Positions 19,320 through 30,414 of a DNA stretch of 64,000 nt are shown one piece after another. Each line of letters begins with the position of its first letter. The first letter of the stretch is position 1. The position numbers were made by a program, and so were the translations under genes. The notes under the pieces are model-generated. The model did no database searches. It saw nothing but the letters and a program-made list of their open reading frames with translations, and was not told the DNA's origin. The DNA is from Euprymna scolopes (Eukaryota): assembly GCA_053919585.1 (NCBI GenBank), contig CM132799.1; one strand, written 5' to 3'.

Positions 19320-19831
19320 AGGAAGTGCGAACAAAAACAAGGCCGATAGCCATTAGTCGCGTGCTCTCGTGTAATGAATGAATGCCATGAAATTCTTAAA
19401 GATAAACTAAAATGACCGAAAAATAGGCTGAAATGACTTAAATAAATAAAAAGTAAATGACTTATAATGACTTTAATGAACTTAAGGATGAATTGATGAC
19501 CTTAAGAATGACTTGAATGCTTAAAAAATAACTGAAATCCTTCAAAAACAACTTGAATGATCTGGAGAATGACTTGAATGGCTTTGAGACTGACTGGTTG
19601 TAAAGTGGGTGATCATTTTACATTAAATTCATACAAAAAAGTGATCCCCCACTGTATATCACAAAAATTATTTGATTTAGGGAATTTGAAACGTTATTTT
19701 CGTATTCAGGAACCCCGAAAACCAATAAATAGTGTTATAATAAACATAAAACGAAATAAAAATTACGTGTGTTAAGGACCGACCGACCGACCGACCGACC
19801 GACTTATAGAGTTACTTGCACACGATTAAAA
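19320..19831. mobile_element. Helentron/HINE-like non-autonomous element with internal aatgactt repeats and (GACC)n
   Basis: aacaaggcc...ttagtcgcgtgc near the left end; right end (gacc)n gacttatagagttacttgcacacgattaaaa matches 28690-28752. Confidence 0.5.
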
Positions 19832-19934
19832 CACTATTCTGTGGTATGCATTTAAAAAAATGTCAGTCGGTCGGCCGGTCCGTAACACATTTACTTATTA
19901 GTTACAAACAATGCAGCATCGGTTAAGAACAGAT

Positions 19935-22900
19935 GGTATTTATTTGCTCCCCCACCGAGCAAATTAGGCACAAGGCCAATTTTTAATGTGAGGAGTGAAG
20001 GGAGGGGGAAGGGAAAAGGGGACCAGCTCCCGAGAGGTGGGAAATAGGAGCTGGTTAAAGGTCAGGCATGTGGGGTTGCCCCCACATCTGGTCTTTGCTA
20101 GTCATAGCTAGTCATAGCTTGCAGTATCTGCCGGAACAGATGGTATTTATTTGCTCCCCCACCGAGCAAATAAGGCACAAGGCCAATTTTTAATGTGAGG
20201 AGTGAAGGGAGGGGGAAGGAAAAAAGGGGACCAGCTCTCGAGAGGTGGGAAATGGGAGTTGGTTAAAGATCAGGTGTGTGGGGTTGCCCCCACATCTGGT
20301 CTTTGCTTGCAGTATCTGCCGGAACAGATGGTATTTATTTGCTCCCCCACCGAGCAAATTAGGCACAAGGCCAATTTTTAATGTGAGGAGTGAAGGGAGG
20401 GGGAAGGGAAAAAGGGGACCAGCTCCCGAGAGGTGGGAAATGGGAGCTGGTTAAAGGTCAGGCATGTGGGGTTGCCCCCACATCTGGTCTTTGCTAGTCA
20501 AAGCTTGCAGTATCTGCCGGAACAGATGGTATTTATTTGCTCCCCCACCGAGCAAATTGGGCACAAGGCCGATTTTTAATGTGAGGAGTGAAGGGGAAAT
20601 GGGGACCAACTCCCCGGGGAGTAGGGGAGCTGGATAGTGACAATTGGTATGAAGGGTGGCCCGTACATTGACCAAGGTCTTATATGTGGGGTCGTCCCCA
20701 CATATGGTCTTTGCTTGCAGTATCTGCCGGAACAGATGGTATTTATTTGCTCCCCCACCGAGCAAATTAGGCACAAGGCCGATTTTTAATGTGAGGAGTG
20801 AAGGGGGGGGAGGGAAAAAGGGGACCAGCTCCCGAGAGGTGGGAAATGGGCGCTGGTTAATGGTCAGGCATGTGGGGTTGCCCCCACATCTGGTCTTTGC
20901 TAGTCATAGCTTGCAGCATCTGCCGGAACAGATGGTATTTATTTGCTCCCCCACCGAGCAAATTAGGCACAAGGCCGATTTTTAATGTGAGGAGTGAAGG
21001 GAGGGGGAAGGGGAAAAGGGACCAGCTCCCGAGGGGTGGGAAATGGGAGCTGGTTAAAGGTCAGGCATGTGGGGTTGCCCCCACATCTGGTCTTTGCTAG
21101 TCATAGCTAGTCATAGCTTGCAGTATCTGCCGGAACAGATGGTATTTATTTGCTCCCCCACCGAGCAAATTAGGCACAAGGCCGATTTTTAATGTGAGGA
21201 GTGAAGGGAGGGGGAAGGGAAAAGGGGCCCAGCTCCCGAGAGGTGGGAAATAGGAGCTGGTTAAAGGTCAGGCATGTGGGGTTGCCCCCACATCTGGTCT
21301 TTGCTAGTCATAGCTAGTCATAGCTAGTCATAGCTTGCAGTATCTGCCGGAACAGATGGTATTTATTTGCTCCCCCACCGAGCAAATTAGGCACAAGGCC
21401 AATTTTTAATGTGAGGAGTGAAGGGAGGGGGAAGGAAAAAAGGGGACCAGCTCTCGAGAGGTGGGAAATGGGAGTTGGTTAAAGATCAGGTGTGTGGGGT
21501 TGCCCCCACATCTGGTCTTTGCTTGCAGTATCTGCCGGAACAGATGGTATTTATTTGCTCCCCCACCGAGCAAATTAGGCACAAGGCCAATTTTTAATGT
21601 GAGGACTGAAGGGAGGGGGAAGGGAAAAAGGGGACCAGCTCCCGAGAGGTGGGAAATGGGAGCTGGTTAAAGGTCAGGCATGTGGGGTTGCCCCCACATC
21701 TGGTCTTTGCTAGTCAAAGCTTGCAGTATCTGCCGGAACAGATGGTATTTATTTGCTCCCCCACCGAGCAAATTGGGCACAAGGCCGATTTTTAATGTGA
21801 GGAGTGAAGGGGAAATGGGGACCAACTCCCCGGGGAGTAGGGGAGCTGGATAGTGACAATTGGTATGAAGGGTGGCCCGTACATTGACCAAGGTCTTATA
21901 TGTGGGGTCGTCCCCACATATGGTCTTTGCTTGCAGTATCTGCCGGAACAGATGGTATTTATTTGCTCCCCCACCGAGCAAATTAGGCACAAGGCCGATT
22001 TTTAATGTGAGGAGTGAAGGGGGGGAGGGAAAAAGGGGACCAGCTCCCGAGAGGTGGGAAATGGGCGCTGGTTAATGGTCAGGCATGTGGGGTTGCCCCC
22101 ACATCTGGTCTTTGCTAGTCATAGCTTGCAGTATCTGCCGGAACAGATGGTATTTATTTGCTCCCCCACCGAGCAAATTAGGCACAAGGCCAATTTTTAA
22201 TGTGAGGAGTGAAGGGAGGGGGAAGGAAAAAAGGGGACCAGCTCTCGAGAGGTGGGAAATGGGAGTTGGTTAAAGATCAGGTGTGTGGGGTTGCCCCCAC
22301 ATCTGGTCTTTGCTTGCAGTATCTGCCGGAACAGATGGTATTTATTTGCTCCCCCACCGAGCAAATTAGGCACAAGGCCAATTTTTAATGTGAGGAGTGA
22401 AGGGAGGGGGAAGGGAAAAAGGGGACCAGCTCCCGAGAGGTGGGAAATGGGAGCTGGTTAAAGGTCAGGCATGTGGGGTTGCCCCCACATCTGGTCTTTG
22501 CTAGTCAAAGCTTGCAGTATCTGCCGGAACAGATGGTATTTATTTGCTCCCCCACCGAGCAAATTGGGCACAAGGCCGATTTTTAATGTTTGGAGTGAAG
22601 GGGAAATGGGGACCAACTCCCCGGGGAGTAGGGGAGCTGGATAGTGACAATTGGTATGAAGGGTGGCCCGTACATTGACCAAGGTCTTATATGTGGGGTC
22701 GTCCCCACATATGGTCTTTGCTTGCAGTATCTGCCGGAACAGATGGTATTTATTTGCTCCCCCACCGAGCAAATTAGGCACAAGGCCGATTTTTAATGTG
22801 AGGAGTGAAGGGGGGGGGAAAAGGGGACCAGCTCCCGAGAGGTGGGAAATGGGCGCTGGTTAATGGTCAGGCATGTGGGGTTGCCCCCACATCTGGTCTT

Positions 22901-25900
22901 TGCTAGTCATATCTTGCAGCATCTGCCGGAACAGATGGTATTTATTTGCTCCCCCACCGAGCAAATTAGGCACAAGGCCGATTTTTAATGTGAGGAGTGA
23001 AGGGAGGGGGAAGGGGAAAAGGGACCAGCTCCCGAGGGGTGGGAAATGGGAGCTGGTTAAAGATCAGGCATGTGGGGTTGCCCCCACATCTGGTCTTTGC
23101 TAGTCATAGCTAGTCATAGCTTGCAGTATCTGCCGGAACAGATGGTATTTATTTGCTCCCCCACCGAGCAAATTAGGCACAAGGCCGATTTTTAATGTAA
23201 GGAGTGAAGGGAGGGGGAAGGGAAAAGGGGACCAGCTCCCGAGAGGTGGGAAATAGGAGCTGGTTAAAGGTCAGGCATGTGGGGTTGCCCCCACATCTGG
23301 TCTTTGCTAGTCATAGCTAGTCATAGCTTGCAGTATCTGCCGGAACAGATGGTATTTGTTTGCTCCCCCACCGAGCAAATTAGGCACAAGGCCAATTTTT
23401 AATGTGAGGAGTGAAGGGAGGGGGAAGGAAAAAAGGGGACCAGCTCTCGAGAGGTGGGAAATGGGAGTTGGTTAAAGATCAGGTGTGTGGGGTTGCCCCC
23501 ACATCTGGTCTTTGCTTGCAGTATCTGCCGGAACAGATGGTATTTATTTGCTCCCCCACCGAGCAAATTAGGCACAAGGCCAATTTTTAATGTGAGGAGT
23601 GAAGGGAGGGGGAAGGGAAAAAGGGGACCAGCTCCCGAGAGGTGGGAAATGGGAGCTGGTTAAAGGTCAGGCATGTGGGGTTGCCCCCACATCTGGTCTT
23701 TTCTAGTCAAAGCTTGCAGTATCTTCCGGAACAGATGGTATTTATTTGCTCCCCCACCGAGCAAATTGGGCACAAGGCCGATTTTTAATGTGAGGAGTGA
23801 AGGGGAAATGGGGACCAACTCCCCGGGGAGTAGGGGAGCTTGATAGTGACAATTGGTATGAAGGGTGGCCCGTACATTGACCAAGGTCTTATATGTGGGG
23901 TCGTCCCCACATATGGTCTTTGCTTGCAGTATCTGCCGGAACAGATGGTATTTATTTGCTCCCCCACCGAGCAAATTAGGCACAAGGCCGATTTTTAATG
24001 TGAGGATAAGGGGGGGGGGAGGGAAAAAGGGGACCAGCTCCCGAGAGGTGGGAAATCGGCGCTGGTTAATGGTCAGGCATGTGGGGTTGCCCCCACATCT
24101 GGTCTTTGCTAGTCATAGCTTGCAGCATCTGCCGGAACAGATGGTATTTATTTGCTCCCCCACCGAGCAAATTAGGCACAAGGCCGATTTTTAATGTGAG
24201 GAGTGAAGGGAGGGGGAAGGGGAAAAGGGACCAGCTCCCGAGGGGTGGGAAATGGGAGCTGGTTAAAGGTCAGGCATGTGGGGTTGCCCCCACATCTGGT
24301 CTTTGCTAGTCATAGCTAGTCATAGCTTGCAGTATCTGCCGGAACAGATGGTATTTATTTGCTCCCCCACCGAGCAAATTAGGCACAAGGCACATTTTTA
24401 ATGTGAGGAGTAAAGGGAGGGGGAGGGAAAAAGGGGACCAGCTCCCGAGAGGTGGGAAATGGGAGCTGGTTTAAGGTTAGGTATGTGGGGTTGCCCCCAC
24501 ATCTGGTTTTTGCTAGTCATAGCTTGCAGTATCTGCCGGAACAGATACTACACTTTGATGGTATTTATTTGCTCCCCCACCGAGCAAATTAGGCACAAGG
24601 CCGATTTTTAATGTGAGGAGTGAAGGGAGGGGGAAGGGAAAAAGGGGACCAGCTCCCGAGAGGTGGGAAATGGGAGCTGGTTAATGGTCAGGCATGTGGG
24701 GTTGCCCCCACATCTGGTCTTTGCTAGTCATAGCTAGTCATAGCTTGCAGTATCTGCCTGAACAGATGGTATTTATTTGCTCCCCCACCGAGCAAATTAG
24801 GCACAAGGCCGATTTTTAATGTGAGGAGTGAAGGGAGGGGGGAAGGGAAAAAGGGGACCAGCTCCCGAGAGGTGGGAAATGGGAGCTGGTTAATGGTAAG
24901 GCATGTGGGGTTGCCCCCACATCTGGTCTTTGCTAGTAATAGCTAGTCCTAGCTTGCAGTATCTGCCGGGACAGATACTACACTTTGATGGTATTTATTT
25001 GCTCCCCCACCGAGCAAATTAGGCACAAGGCCGATTTTTAATGTGAGGAGTGAAGGGAGGGGGAAGGGAAAAAGGGGACCAGCTCCCGAGAGGTGGGAAA
25101 TGGGAGCTGGTTAATGGTCAGGCATGTGGGGTTGCCCCCACATCTGGTCTTTGCTAGTAATAGCTAGTCCTAGCTTGCAGTATCTGCCGGGACAGATACT
25201 ACACTTTGATGGTATTTATTTGCTCCCCCACCGAGCAAATTAGGCACAAGGCCGATTTTTAATGTGAGGAGTGAAGGGAGGGGGAAGGGAAAAAGGGGAC
25301 CAGCTCCCGAGAGGTGGGAAATGGGAGCTGGTTAATGGTCAGGCATGTGGGGTTGCCCCCACATCTGGTCTTTGCTAGTCATAGCTAGTCATAGCTTGCA
25401 GTATCTGCCTGAGCAGATGGTATTTATTTGCTCCCCCACTGAGCAAATTAGGCACAAGGCCGATTTTAATGTGAGGTAAAAACCAGCTCCCCTAAAAGTA
25501 GGCAAAAAAGGGTACTCTGGTTACCAAAAATAATAATTTTCCCAGTATAGAGGGTTTCCCCTCCATTGACTGGTACAAATTATCTTAAGTGCAGCATCTG
25601 CCTGAACAGATGGTATTTATTTGCTCCCCCACCGAGCAAATTAGGCACAAAGCCAATTTTTAATGTGAGGAGTGAAGGGAGGGGGAAGGGAAAAAGGGAC
25701 CAGCTCCCGAGAGGTGGGAAATGGGAGCTGGTTAATGGTCAGGCATGTGGGGTTGCCCCCACATCTGGTCTTTGCTAGTCATAGCTAGTCATAGCTTGCA
25801 GCATCTGCCTGAACAGATGGTATTTATTTGCTCCCCCACTTAGCAAATTAGGCACAAGGCCGTTTTTAATGTGAGGTAAAAACCAGCTCCCCTAAAAGTA

Positions 25901-27547
25901 GGCAAAAAGGGGGCACTCTGGTTACCAAAAATAATAATTGTCCCAGTATAGAGGGTTTCCCCTCCATTGACTGGTACAAATTATCTTAAGTGCAGTATCT
26001 GCCGGAACAGATGGTGTTTATTTGCTCCCCCACTGAGCAAATTAGGCACAAGGCCGTTTTTAATGTGAGGTAAAAACCAGCTCCCCTAAAATGGGTCACT
26101 CTGGTTACCAAAAATAATAATTGTCCCAGTATAGAGGGTTTCCCCTCCATTGACTGGTACAAATTATCTTAAGTGCAGTATCTGCCGGAACAGATGGTAT
26201 TTATTTGCTCCCCCACTGAGCAAATTAGGCACAAGGCCATTTTTAATGTGAGGTAAAAACCAGTTCCCCTAAAAGTAGGCAAAAAGGGGGCACTCTGGTT
26301 TCCAAAAATAATAATTGTCCCAGTATAGAGGGTTTCCCCTCCATTGACTGGTACAAATTATCTTAAGTGCAGTATCTGCCGGAACAGATGGTGTTTATTT
26401 GCTCCCCCACTGAGCAAATTAGGCACAAGGCCGTTTTTAATGTGAGGTAAAAACCAGCTCCCCTAAAAGGGTCACTCTGGTTACCAAAAATAATAATTGT
26501 CCCAGTATAGAGGGTTTCCCCTCCATTGACTGGTACAAATTATCTTAAGTGCAGTATCTGCCGGAACAGATGGTATTTATTTGCTCCCCCACTGAGCAAA
26601 TTAGGCACAAGGCCATTTTTAATGTGAGGTAAAAACCAGCTCCCCTAAAAGTAGGCAAAAAGGGGGCACTCTGGTTACCAAAAATAATAATTGTCCCAGT
26701 ATAGAGGGTTTCCCCTCCATTGACTGGTACAAATTATCTTAAGTGCAGCATCTGCCGGAACAGATGGTATTTATTTGCTCCCCCACTGAGCAAATTAGGC
26801 ACAAGGCCGTTTTTAATGTGAGGTTAAAACCAGCTCCCCTAAAAGTAGGCAAAAAGGGGGCACTCTGGTTACCAAAAATAATAATTGTCCCAGTATAGAG
26901 GGCTTCCCCTATACTGACCGGTACAAATTATCTTAAGTGTAGTATCTGCCGGAACAGATGGTATTTATTTGCTCCCCCACCGAGCAAATTAGGCACAAGG
27001 CCGATTTTTAATGTGAGGAGTGAAGGGAGGGGGAAGGGAAAAAGGGGACCAGCTCCCGAGAGGTGGGAAATGGGAGCTGGTTAATGGTCAGGCATGTGGG
27101 GTTGCCCCCACATCTGGTCTTTGCTAGTCATAGCTGCAGTATCTGCCGGAAGAGATGGTATTTATTTGCTCCCCCACTGAGCAAATTAGGCACAAGGCCG
27201 TTTTTAATGTGAGGTAAAAACCAGCTCCCCTAAAAGGGGTCACTCTGGTTACCAAAAATAATAATTGTCCCAGTATAGAGGGTTTCCCCTCCATTGACTG
27301 GTACAAATTATCTTAAGTGCAGTATCTGCCGGAACAGATAGTATTTATTTGCTCCCCCACCAAGCAAATTAGGCACAAGGCCGATTTTTAATGTGAGGAG
27401 TGAAGGGAGGGGGAAGGGAAAAAGGGGACCAGCTCCCGAGAGGTGGGAAATGGGAGCTGGTTAAAATTCAGGCATGTGGGGTTGCCCCCACATCTGGTCT
27501 TTGCTAGTCATAGCTAGTCATAGCTTGCAGTATCTGCCGGAACAGAT
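19935..27547 (-). repeat. Head-to-tail array of 38 structured non-coding units (26 type A, 4 type B, 8 type C) inserted in a U2 snRNA 5' fragment; putative non-autonomous site-specific retroelement
   Basis: Units start (plus strand) ggtatttatttgctcccccac(c/t)gagcaaattaggcacaaggcc...aatgtgagg and end gcagtatctgccggaacagat. B units at 20528, 21744, 22535, 23737; C units at 25419, 25819, 26013, 26196, 26390, 26572, 26766, 27157. The flanks rejoin to aagaacagat|actacactttgatcttagcc, the reverse complement of the U2 5' region. Confidence 0.9.
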
Positions 27548-27576
27548 ACTACACTTTGATCTTAGCCATGTGGCCA
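27540..27576 (-). pseudogene. U2 snRNA 5' fragment (stem I and branch-point recognition region)
   Basis: Minus strand ggccacatggctaagatcaaagtgtagtatctgttc versus the metazoan U2 consensus GGCCTTTTGGCTAAGATCAA(A)GTGTAGTATCTGTTC; the remainder (atctgttctta) is displaced to 19924-19934 by the array. Confidence 0.9.
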
Positions 27577-27799
27577 ACGAAAAGTTACATTTTGGACAAG
27601 TTTCAGAAAAGTCTAATTGATAGGTAAAACATTTATGGAGGAAACAGTGTGATTATTTGCAATTTTGGTACATTTTTACCCCCTTATGAGCCTCTTGGAA
27701 TGCTGAATATCAGTTACAATGGACAAACTATGCAGTTTTACACCGTAACACATGTATATTTGACTTCAGCACCATGGGAGAGAACTATATAGATATACA

Positions 27800-27880
27800 T
27801 TTTTTTTTACACAGTGATCACCACTTATCAAGGCCCGGAAGCCACTCAGGAATAAGGGTTATTGCAAGTACAAGTACAAA
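27800..27880 (-). mobile_element. Very short 3' tail of the CR1/L2-type LINE
   Basis: T-run then caccacttatcaaggcccggaagccactcaggaataagggttattgca, matching about 14240-14285 and 56950-56985. Confidence 0.8.
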
Positions 27881-28249
27881 CGGTGCAGTTTCACACCTTA
27901 ACACATGTATTTTTACATTCAGCAACATGCGGAACCACTATATAGACATATCAAGTTTTTGTTGAGAAATATGAGAAACGCGCCAGAAGAAAGGGCGTTT
28001 TCAGTACAAAACATCCCAGTGGGATGCAAACCAGACGTTTACCAGGATCACTCATACTGAATTTATATTAAGTACAATGCCCTCCACATTTTGGGCTAGT
28101 TTCAGAAAAATCTAATGGATGGATCAAATGTCACGGGGCAAAAAGTGTCATTTTGGGCCATTTTTTATCGCTTTTGAGATGGAGTGCTTTGCATGCGACT
28201 AAAAATGCCTTAGCATGGAAGGGTTTTCCCTTCCATTGCCAAGGAACAG

Positions 28250-28678
28250 TTACAAACGTAAGTACAGCATCTATTAAGAACAGATACTACACTTTGGTAT
28301 TTATTTGCTCCCCCACTGAGCAAATTAGGCACAACGCCGATTTTTAAAGTGAGGAGTGAAGGGGAAATGGGGACCAACTCCTCGGGGAGTAGGGAAGGGG
28401 GCTAGTGACAATTAGTAATAAGGGTTGCCCCTACATTGGCCAAGGTCTTATCTGTGGGGTCGCCCCCACATAGGGTCTTTGCTTGCAGTATCTGCCCCGG
28501 CAGATACTAAACTTTGATCTTAGCTATGTGGCCAAGGAAACTTTACAAACATAAATACAGCATGTAGTAAGACAGATACTCAATTTGATCTTGGCCAAAA
28601 GGCCAAGACAAGCTTACAAAGCTAAGAACAGCATCTATTAACAACAGACCTTTGATCTTAACCAAAAAGGCCAAGCAC
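28250..28678 (-). repeat. Three tandem ~65-70 bp repeats each containing a U2 5' fragment; the first is interrupted by a solo unit
   Basis: Unit acaaa...cagcatctattaagaacagatactacactttgatcttagccaaaaggccaag; copies at about 28250-28295 plus 28501-28540, 28545-28612 and 28615-28678. Confidence 0.85.
28296..28505 (-). mobile_element. Solo type-B unit inserted in a U2 fragment
   Basis: Same ends as array units but more diverged; flanked by cagatactacacttt (left) and cagatactaaacttt (right). Confidence 0.85.
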
Positions 28679-30414
28679 AAAAGTGTTATAGACAGACCGA
28701 CCGACCAACGGACCGACGGAGTGACTTATAGAGTCGCTTGCACGCGAGTAAAAAGGAAATCAGGAAAAAAAAAAACACCACGTGCTCGGAGGGAGACCAA
28801 AATCTACGTCGAAGAAGAAAATGGATATGTGGTCGGAGAAGAAACGTGTTCGGTGAGCTAGATGGACGAAAGAAGCAAGATACTTTTAAAGTGATGTCAA
28901 GACGGGAAAGTGTGATAAATACTTTGTTAAAACAGAAAAAATGTGGACTCGGATTTTCATTTATTTCTTCACTTTTTTATTTTTATTTATTACTAAAGAC
29001 AAGTGTAACTTCATGTAATGTTACATAATACTTATTTTGGTAGACGTGACCAGGCATTTACTCATAAAAGGGACAATATAAAGAAAGAAGAAAGAAAAAC
29101 AAACGTTTTTACGGAAAAATGCAACTGCAAAAGAAATTCGCCCGAGAGTGCAAAACTTTGAAATAAAAAGAATAGGATATTGCACAAGTTGGTGAGTCAC
29201 TTGTTTGCTTTTTTCTGCTAATTTTCGAATTTTTCTTTGTCTTTTCAGTAATATTTACTTGTTTTGGGGAGACGTTGGTTATGCATAAGGAATATTGTTT
29301 CATACTCATTTTAACATAACAAATAGCTTGTATTGTTTTAGAGACGAATTTACAACTCATTTTGACTGGAACAAATTTTTGAAGTTTGTTTTTGGACTTG
29401 TTTTTTAAACTCCTGTTTTATTGTTATGAATTACTAAAGTTTAAAATTAAAAGAAAAATGGTGGATATTTTGCAAAATTGGAATAAATGTTTAAACAATT
29501 ATAACGTGTGAAAAGCAAATATAAGTACTAAAGTAAGTCCTAAGAAGTTACAATAAGTGTAACTTTATTTCTATAAAGAGTAGTAATTATATTTTAAGCT
29601 TATGGGTTGTTTATAATTTACTGTTAATCCTGGCATTGTGAAAAATGATTAAATATCAACATGTATTTATTTTTATTCATTTATTTTTATTTATTTATTT
29701 TTTTACAAAGAACCTGAAAAAATGCACGTTCTTTTTAGCTGAGCAACTTACAAATACTTTTATTTTATTTGCGAACTTTTCACCGGGTCTTGTGCTTTTG
29801 TTTGTCGTTATTTTACTGTTTGTCGATTTAGATAAATACATAAGACTGGAATATTAAAACCTAAGTAGTTTTAATTTTGAAATAAAGCAAGACTGCATGA
29901 CGTCAGATAGGACACTTGACATGAAGGAAATTATTTTTTAACTTAAACTCTTTATGACGATAAGGGGCTACAGCTTGCATTGTCGTTATTGTAGAAATAT
30001 AAATGCCTACTATATATTTGGGATGCGCGCAGTCCTCGATTATAGAAATAGAAGATGTAAACAGCGACAATTTTTTCCTGTAGAATTCGGATAGCGTATC
30101 AAATTTCCAGAGTATGTACGTGAACTTATCATCGGAAGTGAGTCATTACACTTTTGTTGATCGGTTCACAAACAAAGCAGCTAAGAGAATAAGGGAATAA
30201 ATAGTAGTGAATGAGTATACAGTGTTCGAATTAGGTGCTTCATGATAACGTTAAACTTTACTGTGACACGAAAAAGAGAAAATGCAATAAGTGTTGTATA
30301 ATGTTGATTAAAACGGACGTCTTTTCAATTATTAAATCATTCCTCTCTGATAAGTTTATTAGAGTATTCGTTCATAGGCAAAAATAAGAAGCTCACAGTA
30401 TTAGTGCTAGAGTT

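What the first reader, a model, noticed from the sequence alone, without database searches (positions are those of the whole stretch)
19935..28505. Three sequence families, one RNA fold: GNRA hairpins and a covarying loop-loop pairing on the minus strand
Seen on the minus strand: (1) a hairpin capped by GCAA in A (atgtgggg-gcaa-ccccacat), GAAA in C (atggaggg-gaaa-ccctctat) and GCGA in the solo B (ACGA in array B); (2) a ccagctccc/gggagctgg-type stem in all families; (3) a 3' hairpin atttgctc-loop-gagcaaat. The loop of (3) is complementary to the loop of (2): GGTGGG with CCCACC in A, and AGTGGG with CCTACT in C and solo B, so both sides change together. Several mismatches become G-U pairs only on the minus strand. 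Inference: selection on a folded RNA, for example an RT-recognition module or a ribozyme. Caveats: the 188-bp A variant has changes that are mismatches on the minus strand, and the three short C units lack the partner loop.
Basis: partly seen in the sequence, partly recalled or inferred. Interest (0 to 1): 0.82.

Follow-up and report, generated by a model that had tools for sequence, protein, structure and literature searches.

The report
U2-targeting retroposon units with LINE-like fold
The "three families with one RNA fold" are subfamilies of a short mollusc retroposon that stacks at one site of U2-snRNA-derived sequence. Its 3' hairpin is a miniature of the 3' end of U2-targeting LINEs in the same genome, but the proposed covarying loop-loop contact is no better than chance.

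Summary
The stretch holds 38 head-to-tail units (26 A, 4 B, 8 C) on the minus strand. They lie between a U2 snRNA 5' fragment and the rest of that target, joined ...AAATACCA|TCTGTTC at the insertion site known for Keno and Utopia LINEs.

The scan had already found this self-stacking retroposon elsewhere in this genome (s1-295487, s1-295489).

New here:
- **Partner LINEs.** Intact APE+RT LINEs sit in the real U2 gene array and in U2-derived SINE heads. One of them, LINE-a, has the units' tail and junction.
- **Hairpin 3.** About 12 LINE 3' ends and the units share one architecture: a GGCCUUGUGCC mini-hairpin, UA, a terminal stem-loop and a short tail. Stem sequences differ, and G·U pairs occur on the sense strand only. 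Hairpin 3 is therefore a LINE-type RT-recognition module.
- **Hairpin 1.** It covaries: 4 of 8 pairs change on both sides.
- **Loop-loop pairing.** Not supported. Shuffled loops match equally well in 50-75% of trials, and C units without the partner loop number about 7,000.
- **Ribozyme.** No Rfam match.
- **RNA-seq.** Both strands are covered.

The parts
27540..27577 (-). U2 snRNA 5' fragment (target 'head'), ending ...GTGTAGTATCTGTTC. The array starts immediately after it.
   Evidence: Rfam U2 (RF00004) sub-threshold hit at 27422-27586, 35.8 bits. Coordinates. The real U2 of this genome reads the same here.
19934..27546 (-). Array of 38 head-to-tail units of 182-222 nt (26 A, 4 B, 5 C-long, 3 C-short). 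Each is TCTGTTC plus a body ending ...GAGCAAATAAATACCA.
   Evidence: TRF periods of 194-221. Unit map. The lower half is a 1.2-kb six-unit higher-order repeat at 97-98% identity.
19913..19933 (-). Rest of the interrupted U2-like target (TCTGTTCTTAACCGATGCTGC...) downstream of the last unit.
21680..21699 (-). Hairpin 1 in an A unit (8 bp, GCAA loop). Unit 21545-21742 is the example.
   Evidence: Covariation among the abundant types A, C, E and B2.
21635..21666 (-). Stem 2 in an A unit (CCAGCTCCC / GGGAGCTGG) with a 13-nt loop holding CCCACC.
   Evidence: It has almost the same sequence in all families, so it carries little covariation.
21599..21634 (-). C/U-rich tract. This is the start of the part that aligns to the LINE-a 3' end.
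   Evidence: The last ~92 nt of A align to the last ~120 nt of LINE-a, z = 5.2.
21578..21588 (-). Box mini-hairpin GGC-CUUGU-GCC, shared with the LINE 3' ends.
   Evidence: 17-nt exact match to LINE-b. The box followed by a non-unit stem occurs 6,561 times in the genome. Folds.
21553..21575 (-). Hairpin 3 (AUUUGCUC - GGUGGGG - GAGCAAAU), a miniature of the LINE terminal stem-loop.
   Evidence: Compensated variants F (C-G to G-C) and X1 (C-G to U-A) at the loop-closing pair.
21545..21552 (-). Single-stranded tail AAAUACCA, identical to the LINE-a tail and joined to TCTGTTC of the target.
21743..21952 (-). Example B unit. It has two hairpins (21900-21919 and 21865-21884), stem 2 with a G·U pair (21822-21849) and hairpin 3 (21751-21773).
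26571..26764 (-). Example C-long unit: hairpin 26701-26720 (GAAA loop), Sm-like AUUAUUAUUUUUGG at 26678-26691, stem 2 with the CCUACU loop at 26636-26674, hairpin 3 at 26579-26601.
27156..27338 (-). Example C-short unit. Stem 2 has a 4-5 nt loop and no partner for loop 3.
   Evidence: 6,991 copies of this form genome-wide.
28295..28504 (-). Solo B unit, decayed, behind another U2 5' fragment. Its 3' end joins U2 at AAAGTGTAG.

Best explanation
A, B and C are subfamilies of one non-autonomous retroposon, and its RNA is the window's minus strand.

Shown:
- The units sit at one point of U2-snRNA-derived sequence. The 5' junction follows ...UCUGUUC, and the 3' junction lies at an AUC of U2, usually the one at the classical Keno/Utopia site.
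- Intact APE+RT LINEs with the same junctions lie in the real U2 gene array and in U2-derived SINE heads.

Inferred:
- The LINE's ORF2 protein recognises this 3' module and copies the unit RNA into the nicked target by target-primed reverse transcription. The AUC at the RNA's end probably pairs with an AUC of the target.
- Each insertion duplicates UCUGUUC and so recreates a target, which builds mixed arrays. DNA duplication then enlarges them.
- Hairpin 1 is kept by compensatory change in the source copies, but its role is unknown.
- The loop 2 / loop 3 complementarity is a by-product of a G-rich loop facing pyrimidine-rich sequence. It is not a required contact.
For: - **Site and spread.** Junction sequences. 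The site matches Kojima & Jurka 2015, PMC4640811. Copies 97-100% identical to the A unit were scored on at least 25 contigs, and the loci examined hold short mixed A/B/C arrays. There are 27,175 empty U2-headed E-SINE targets flanked by TSDs.
- **LINEs.** Insertions of 7.1-7.6 kb in the 764-bp U2 array carry ORF2 with Exo_endo_phos + RVT_1 + zf-RVT and ORF1 with zf-CCHC. In five of six dispersed loci examined, the LINE-a tail ...CTAAATACC is followed by ATCTGTTC of a U2-derived head (E-SINE or unit).
- **3' module.** Box match at p < 1/300. A unit against the LINE-a 3' end, z = 5.2. One architecture in about 12 LINE 3' ends and the units, with 7-14 bp basal stems of different sequence and 1-3 G·U pairs in every LINE stem (none in the unit stems). 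Summed sense MFE -208 against antisense -106 kcal/mol.
- **Hairpin 1.** 97.9% of cells paired; 4 of 8 pairs changed on both sides; covariation score 0.502 against 0.261±0.04, reached by 0 of 500 shuffles.
- **Relatives.** ORF2 relatives at 28-31% identity on marine metagenome contigs also sit in U2 genes.
Against: - No experiment links LINE-a protein to the units.
- LINE-a's terminal stem (25 bp) is far longer than the units' (8 bp). The box plus stem base is closest to LINE-b, while the tail is closest to LINE-a, so the true partner may be another member of the group.
- Within A, B and C the 3' module is invariant. RNAalifold prefers an alternative pairing to hairpin 3, so hairpin 3 rests on the LINE comparison and two variant copies.
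- The hairpin-1 rows were picked with a pairing-tolerant filter. The A and C hairpins may be paralogues.
- Poly(A) single-cell RNA-seq shows both strands, with somewhat more plus-strand RNA and no discrete ends.
- How the units are transcribed is unknown.
Confidence: 0.75

Rival explanations
1. One reading: the loop of stem 2 and the loop of hairpin 3 form a selected kissing or pseudoknot contact, so the unit is a compact tertiary fold.
For: Six contiguous pairs are possible in A (CCCACC/GGUGGG), B (CCUACU/GGUGGG, with G·U) and C-long (CCUACU/AGUGGG). The series G-C, G·U, A-U at one position looks like a compensatory path.
Against: - Shuffled partner loops of the same composition reach the observed run in 50-75% of trials.
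- Only one informative position changes.
- C-short lacks the partner loop yet has 6,991 dispersed copies, against 15,083 for C-long.
- The LINEs have no G-rich loop.
- The same loop can pair with CCUCAC or the C-tract, which RNAalifold prefers.
Confidence: 0.1
2. The G-rich loop GGUGGGG is kept because it binds a protein, for example the CCHC zinc knuckle of the LINE ORF1 protein, as exposed G-rich loops bind retroviral nucleocapsid. This is a sub-hypothesis and is compatible with the best explanation.
For: ORF1 of the U2-array LINE has a zf-CCHC knuckle. The loop is nearly invariant in A, B, C and the variants F and X1 while the closing pair changes. The nucleocapsid analogy comes from general knowledge and was not tested.
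Against: The LINE terminal loops are AU-rich and not G-rich, so the LINE's own RNA lacks such a site at this position. Invariance may simply reflect youth.
Confidence: 0.12
3. The unit contains a self-cleaving ribozyme that trims co-transcripts, as R2 elements and their short derivatives do.
For: Site-specific LINEs co-transcribed with their target often need 5' processing (general knowledge). The units are structured, and every unit begins at the same base.
Against: No match to any Rfam ribozyme family in the window, the units or the LINE 5' ends, even at E up to 1-10. By inspection, no HDV-like P1/P2 nesting could be placed around either hairpin. The constant 5' end is explained by the target-site duplication.
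Confidence: 0.03
4. This is a plain satellite. The hairpins are relics of the U2-derived ancestor, and copies spread only by DNA-level amplification without selection on RNA.
For: Half of this array is a DNA-level higher-order repeat. Decayed variants are copied along with it. Both strands appear in RNA-seq.
Against: - Near-identical units lie at many loci in different orders, inside TSD-flanked SINE heads.
- Two-sided compensatory changes occur in hairpin 1.
- The 3' module is shared with LINEs that have intact ORFs.
- Beyond the head, similarity to U2 is not significant (z 1.1-2.3).
Confidence: 0.06

Closest known systems
SINE-LINE pairs with a shared 3' tail (the 'stringent' type; cited as Kajikawa & Okada 2002 in PMC4494074)
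   Same: A short non-coding retroposon whose last ~90 nt copy the 3' end of a LINE in the same genome, including a terminal stem-loop and tail. It has TSDs and a high copy number.
   Different: The unit has no small-RNA head or recognisable pol III promoter of its own. It is strictly site-specific, and it lands in the U2-derived head of an older SINE or of its own kin, which builds tandem arrays.
Keno (Tx1 clade), an APE-type LINE specific for U2 snRNA genes (PMC4494074, PMC4640811)
   Same: LINE-a and LINE-b encode APE + RT + a C-terminal zinc finger and lie in U2 genes. LINE-a and the units have the 3' flank starting at UCUGUUCUU, as reported for Keno and Utopia. Relatives at 28-31% identity on other contigs are in U2 genes too.
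   Different: Keno is reported from vertebrates, lancelet and cnidarians, not from molluscs in the text read. Here the tail is AAAUACC or AUAUAAACA instead of poly(A). In the real U2 array the 3' junction is at U2 nt 1-3 or 26-28. Most copies are in SINE heads rather than U2 genes. Tx1-clade membership by RT phylogeny was not tested.
SINEU, the U1/U2-headed SINEs of crocodilians (Kojima 2015, PMC4494074)
   Same: U2-derived 5' sequence, no evident internal promoter, recurrent joining of U2 pieces, and mobilisation ascribed to Tx1-type LINEs.
   Different: SINEU targets a Mariner transposon and is not reported to stack in its own U2 head. Here the U2 head belongs to the target (the E-SINE), and the A/B/C units carry only a 7-nt duplication of it.
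Utopia (RLE-type U2-specific LINE) and tandem insertion of Utopia-1_NVit (PMC4640811)
   Same: Same target point in U2, and occasional tandem insertion.
   Different: The LINEs found here have an APE domain, not a restriction-like endonuclease.
R2 SIDEs, short internally deleted derivatives of a site-specific LINE (from memory, not read here)
   Same: Short non-coding elements using a site-specific LINE's 3' recognition structure at the same target.
   Different: R2 SIDEs keep the LINE's 5' ribozyme. No ribozyme was found here, and similarity to the LINE 5' UTR is only borderline (p ≈ 0.05).

Membership tests
LINE-dependent non-autonomous retroposon (SINE in the broad sense) | 3' end shared with a LINE of the same genome | tested here: met
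   17-nt box match at p < 1/300. A unit against the LINE-a 3' end, z = 5.2. Identical tail and junction. Same fold.
LINE-dependent non-autonomous retroposon (SINE in the broad sense) | Dispersed copies flanked by target-site duplications | tested here: met
   A 7-nt TCTGTTC lies on both sides of every unit. Copies lie on at least 25 contigs.
LINE-dependent non-autonomous retroposon (SINE in the broad sense) | Small-RNA-derived head with an internal pol III promoter | tested here: not met
   The unit itself starts CGGCAGAUACUGCA. This is an imperfect antisense match to the U2 branch-site region (GUAGUAUCUG), with which it can form a 10-bp hairpin including one G·U. It is not a sense small-RNA head. 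The U2 head belongs to the target. U2 genes use an external promoter (PMC4494074).
Keno / Tx1-clade U2-specific LINE (for the partner LINEs) | APE endonuclease plus RT | tested here: met
   Pfam Exo_endo_phos 2e-15, RVT_1 6.5e-31, zf-RVT 1.3e-7.
Keno / Tx1-clade U2-specific LINE (for the partner LINEs) | Insertion at the specific U2 site, with the 3' flank starting UCUGUUCUU | tested here: met
   Dispersed LINE-a copies. Within the real U2 array the 3' flank starts at U2 nt 2 or nt 25 instead.
Keno / Tx1-clade U2-specific LINE (for the partner LINEs) | RT groups with the Tx1 clade in a phylogeny | not tested
   No named Tx1 or Keno reference sequence was available.
Self-cleaving ribozymes (HDV-like, hammerhead, twister, and others in Rfam) | Match to a family covariance model | tested here: not met
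   Zero hits at gathering threshold. At E up to 1-10, only U2 and spurious microRNA, RNase P or XIST hits appeared.
U2 snRNA gene | Full-length match above the Rfam gathering score | tested here: not met
   35.8 and 33.8 bits against a threshold of 46. The real U2 scores 161.3. Similarity of the unit bodies to U2 beyond the head is z 1.1-2.3.
Covariation-supported kissing loop or pseudoknot | Complementarity and covariation beyond what composition gives | tested here: not met
   Shuffle test 50-75%. The partner loop is dispensable.

The most novel reading that the evidence does not exclude
The complementarity between the G-rich loop of the LINE-type 3' hairpin and the pyrimidine loop of stem 2 (or the C-tract) is a real but facultative tertiary contact. 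It would tune how well a subfamily competes for the LINE's protein, making this a SINE that has added an RNA switch to a borrowed LINE tail.
Probability: 0.1. Interest if true: 0.6.

Novelty: new variant of a known kind. Interest (0 to 1): 0.5.

Why it matters
This gives a concrete, testable SINE-LINE pair for a site-specific APE-type LINE. It offers a roughly 45-nt minimal 3' module (box hairpin, 8-bp stem-loop, 8-nt tail) beside about a dozen natural LINE versions of the same architecture.

That makes it a ready-made mutational series for asking what a Tx1/Keno-like reverse transcriptase recognises, and how a few bases of RNA-target pairing (AUC) set the junction.

It also explains how tens of thousands of tandem 'satellite' units can arise by retrotransposition into a self-renewing target. 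Finally, it removes a tempting but unsupported claim of tertiary covariation.

Tried and rejected
- **Ribozyme.** Rfam at gathering and permissive thresholds on the window, the array and the LINE-bearing loci gave only U2.
- **U2 variant gene.** Rejected. The score is below threshold, and body similarity to the real U2 is not significant.
- **The genome search with RF00004.** Failed twice. The real U2 was found by pattern search instead.
- **Utopia (RLE) as partner.** Rejected, because ORF2 has an APE domain.
- **Unit 5' part derived from the LINE 5' UTR.** GCAAAGACCAGA against GCAAGGACCAGA, each followed by a hairpin. This is only borderline (p ≈ 0.05 for A, not for B, C or E) and is kept as a lead.
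- **Formal pair counts on hairpin 3 across LINEs.** MAFFT did not put the 3' arms in register, so per-sequence folds were used.
- **RNAalifold on A/B/C.** It gave no covariation and an alternative pairing.
- **RNA-seq.** Poly(A) and oligo-dT libraries show both strands and no discrete ends, so they neither support nor refute a dedicated minus-strand RNA.
- **Naming the LINE clade from database names.** The homologues are unnamed.
Full report
**What is in the window**

Tandem Repeats Finder reports arrays of period 194-221 between about 20,100 and 27,500. Read on the minus strand and mapped unit by unit, the stretch is as follows.
- A U2 snRNA 5' fragment lies at 27540-27577.
- 38 head-to-tail units run from 27546 to 19934: 26 A, 4 B, 5 C-long and 3 C-short.
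- The rest of the interrupted U2-like target follows at 19913-19933.
- Each unit is TCTGTTC plus a body ending ...GAGCAAATAAATACCA.
- Three units carry 13 extra U2 bases at the junction.
- A decayed solo B lies at 28295-28504, behind another U2 fragment.

The lower half of the array is a six-unit, 1.2-kb higher-order repeat at 97-98% identity. The 188-bp A variant and the ACGA-loop B are therefore single decayed copies multiplied by DNA duplication. They are not independent witnesses for or against a fold.

**What the units are**

Rfam finds nothing at gathering score. At permissive thresholds it finds only sub-threshold U2 matches at the array head.

The genome is 5.9 Gb. Copies 97-100% identical to the A unit were scored on at least 25 contigs, and in the loci examined they lie in short arrays that mix A, B and C in different orders.

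These arrays lie inside the U2-derived head of an abundant, TSD-flanked SINE, called 'E' here. The head-body junction of E occurs 27,175 times.

The unit's 3' flank starts at UCUGUUCUU. Kojima & Jurka report this as the insertion point of the U2-specific LINEs Utopia and Keno (PMC4640811). Two earlier reports of this scan on other pieces of the genome reached the same reading of self-stacking units. I arrived at the U2-site reading from the paper before opening them.

**The partner LINEs (new here)**

The real U2 genes (Rfam 161 bits) form a 764-bp tandem array on contig 9. A 22-mer spanning the insertion site occurs 1,186 times in the genome, mostly in that array. Gaps of 7.9-8.4 kb in that periodicity are LINE insertions.

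Each LINE has two ORFs:
- ORF1 has a CCHC knuckle.
- ORF2 has Exo_endo_phos (APE), RVT_1 and zf-RVT.

They are therefore Keno-like, not Utopia-like.

Two families were read:
- **LINE-b** ends ...AATAAATAAATA and joins U2 at AGATCAAAG.
- **LINE-a** ends ...CGACTAAATACCA and joins U2 at its first bases. It has about 83 copies.

In five of six dispersed LINE-a loci examined, the tail is followed by ATCTGTTC of an E-SINE head or of a unit, the junction the units use. In all cases the 5' junction follows ...TCTGTTC. The 3' junction falls at one of the three AUC triplets in the first 46 nt of U2. This suggests, as an inference, that the RNA's terminal AUC pairs with the target.

ORF2 relatives at 28-31% identity on marine metagenome contigs also sit in U2 genes, with poly(A) tails. 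Tx1-clade membership was not tested. Keno is placed in Tx1 by PMC4494074.

**Hairpin 3 is a LINE-type 3' module**

The box GGCCTTGTGCCTAA followed by a stem other than the units' occurs 6,561 times. The 30 loci fetched are mostly LINE 3' ends followed by U2 fragments.

Folded one by one, about 12 LINE 3' ends from several families and units A, C and F give the same picture:
- a 3-bp mini-hairpin GGC-CUUGU-GCC;
- UA;
- a terminal stem-loop whose basal helix is 7-14 continuous pairs;
- 5-9 unpaired tail bases.

The stem sequences differ between families. For example AAUUUGUUUUGU, AGUUGUAUCGG and AUUUGCUC each face their own complement. Every LINE stem has 1-3 G·U pairs on the sense strand. Summed MFE is -208 kcal/mol for the sense strand against -106 for the antisense strand.

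Two further results tie the units to the LINEs:
- The last ~92 nt of the A unit align to the last ~120 nt of LINE-a, z = 5.2.
- The box matches at p < 1/300.

Among units, variants F and X1 change the loop-closing pair C-G to G-C and to U-A.

Within A, B and C themselves the module is invariant. RNAalifold even prefers CUCAC:GUGGG plus a 5'/3' closing helix. Hairpin 3 therefore rests on the LINE comparison.

**Hairpin 1**

The abundant types are:
- A/B1: ATGTGGGG...CCCCACAT (71 copies in 23 loci);
- C: ATGGAGGG...CCCTCTAT (52 copies in 17 loci);
- E: GTGGAGGA...TCCTTCAC (17 copies in 17 loci);
- B2: ATGTAGGG...CCCTTCAT (17 copies in 12 loci).

On a 12-row alignment, 97.9% of cells pair and 4 of 8 pairs change on both sides. 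The covariation score is 0.502 against 0.261±0.04 in shuffles (0 of 500 reach it) and 0.08-0.33 for slid partners.

Caveats:
- The rarer rows were chosen with a filter allowing at most one mismatch.
- MAFFT aligns the A hairpin with B's first hairpin and the C hairpin with B's second. A and C are thus probably paralogous copies of one hairpin; B's two hairpins are about 70% alike by my count.
- Within the C/B2/E set alone, two pairs still change on both sides.
- Most of the GNRA loop variants in A/B1 (GCGA, GCAA, GUGA, GUAA) are what CpG decay of GCGA would give. They need no selection to explain them.

**Stem 2**

It is present in A (9 bp), in B (10 bp with one G·U) and, interrupted, in C. 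It is absent from E. Its sequence is nearly the same in all families, so it says little.

**The loop-loop pairing**

Loop 3 is GGUGGGG or AGUGGGG. With G·U allowed, it pairs with almost any pyrimidine run that holds one A.
- Shuffling loop 2 while keeping its composition reaches the observed run in 50% (A), 50% (B) and 75% (C-long) of trials.
- B combines CCUACU with GGUGGGG.
- C-short has no partner loop yet counts 6,991 dispersed copies, against 15,083 for C-long.
- The LINEs have no G-rich loop.
- CCUCAC and the C-tract are equally good partners.

I therefore judge this contact unsupported and not required.

**Strand and expression**

Whole units fold better than dinucleotide shuffles on the sense strand (z -2.5 to -3.6) than on the antisense strand (z -1.2 to -1.5).

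Raw reads of an oligo-dT single-cell library cover both strands. Minus-strand RNA has depth 48-134 and plus-strand RNA 101-186 over the A unit. Strand was calibrated on a neighbouring poly(A) element. There are no discrete ends, and 93% of reads run on into other contexts. This is expected for read-through of ~50,000 copies. It cannot show a non-polyadenylated template.

**Verdict**

Hairpin 1 is structurally constrained. The covarying loop-loop contact and the ribozyme idea are not supported.

This is a new variant of a known kind: a LINE-tail-bearing non-autonomous retroposon, here specific for the Keno site and self-stacking.

Noticed in passing
L041/L042 = G000:C9:168918200-168936600 (U2 on minus strand): LINE-a insertions in the real U2 array are followed by U2 from nt 2 to its end, scoring a full 161 bits in Rfam. 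The insertion thus leaves a complete U2 coding sequence downstream. This is either a 44-45-nt duplication or a template jump at the 5' end of U2 RNA.
   Followed up: partly
G000:C19:152706164-152792024, C41:27764698-27792735, C1:6986440-7016970: The LINEs themselves form head-to-tail arrays: about 7.0-kb spacing for LINE-a and about 7.6 kb for a LINE-b-type family. Judging by the U2 pieces that follow the LINE-b-type 3' ends in loci L049-L052, they stack as the short units do.
   Followed up: no
L081:5515-5745 and L082:5301-5531 (marine metagenome contigs): In another organism, a Keno-type LINE in a U2 gene is followed by GTATCTGTTCTT and then a ~215-nt non-coding element with its own poly(A), at the same U2 site. 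Stacking of a short element behind the LINE is therefore not unique to this genome.
   Followed up: partly
L080:5530-5600: A 31%-identical LINE relative carries CCTTGTGCGCTAAT, close to the box CCTTGTGCCTAAT, followed by a terminal stem just before its poly(A). The box may be conserved across distant U2-specific LINEs.
   Followed up: partly
window 27792-27875: A short repeat here is very abundant in poly(A) RNA with strong strand bias (depth 576-888 against 63-105). Poly-T loose ends on its left mark a minus-strand polyadenylated RNA.
   Followed up: no
window 19756-19901 and 28690-28760: Elements rich in (GACC)n/(GGTC)n lie on both sides of the U2 fragments, and the one at 19756-19901 folds as a long inverted repeat. 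That one gives spurious mir-341 and MIR405 hits. Similar flanks precede U2 fragments at other loci (L009, L016).
   Followed up: no
window 28501-28641: Two copies of a 71-bp repeat made of U2 5' fragments, upstream of the solo B unit.
   Followed up: no
window 28199-28240: Another U2-derived element with a 9-bp hairpin capped AAAA, followed by an Sm-like GCAUUUUUAG. This is a further relative of hairpin 1.
   Followed up: no
LINE-a and LINE-b 5' UTRs (L042, L040), about 80-125 nt from the 5' end: A conserved block TCTGCAAGGACCAG + CCCC...GGGG hairpin + GGACC is the only alignable part of the two 5' UTRs (score 40 against a shuffle maximum of 29). A and B units have CTGCAAGCAAAGACCAG + hairpin 1 + GACC in the same order.
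   Followed up: partly
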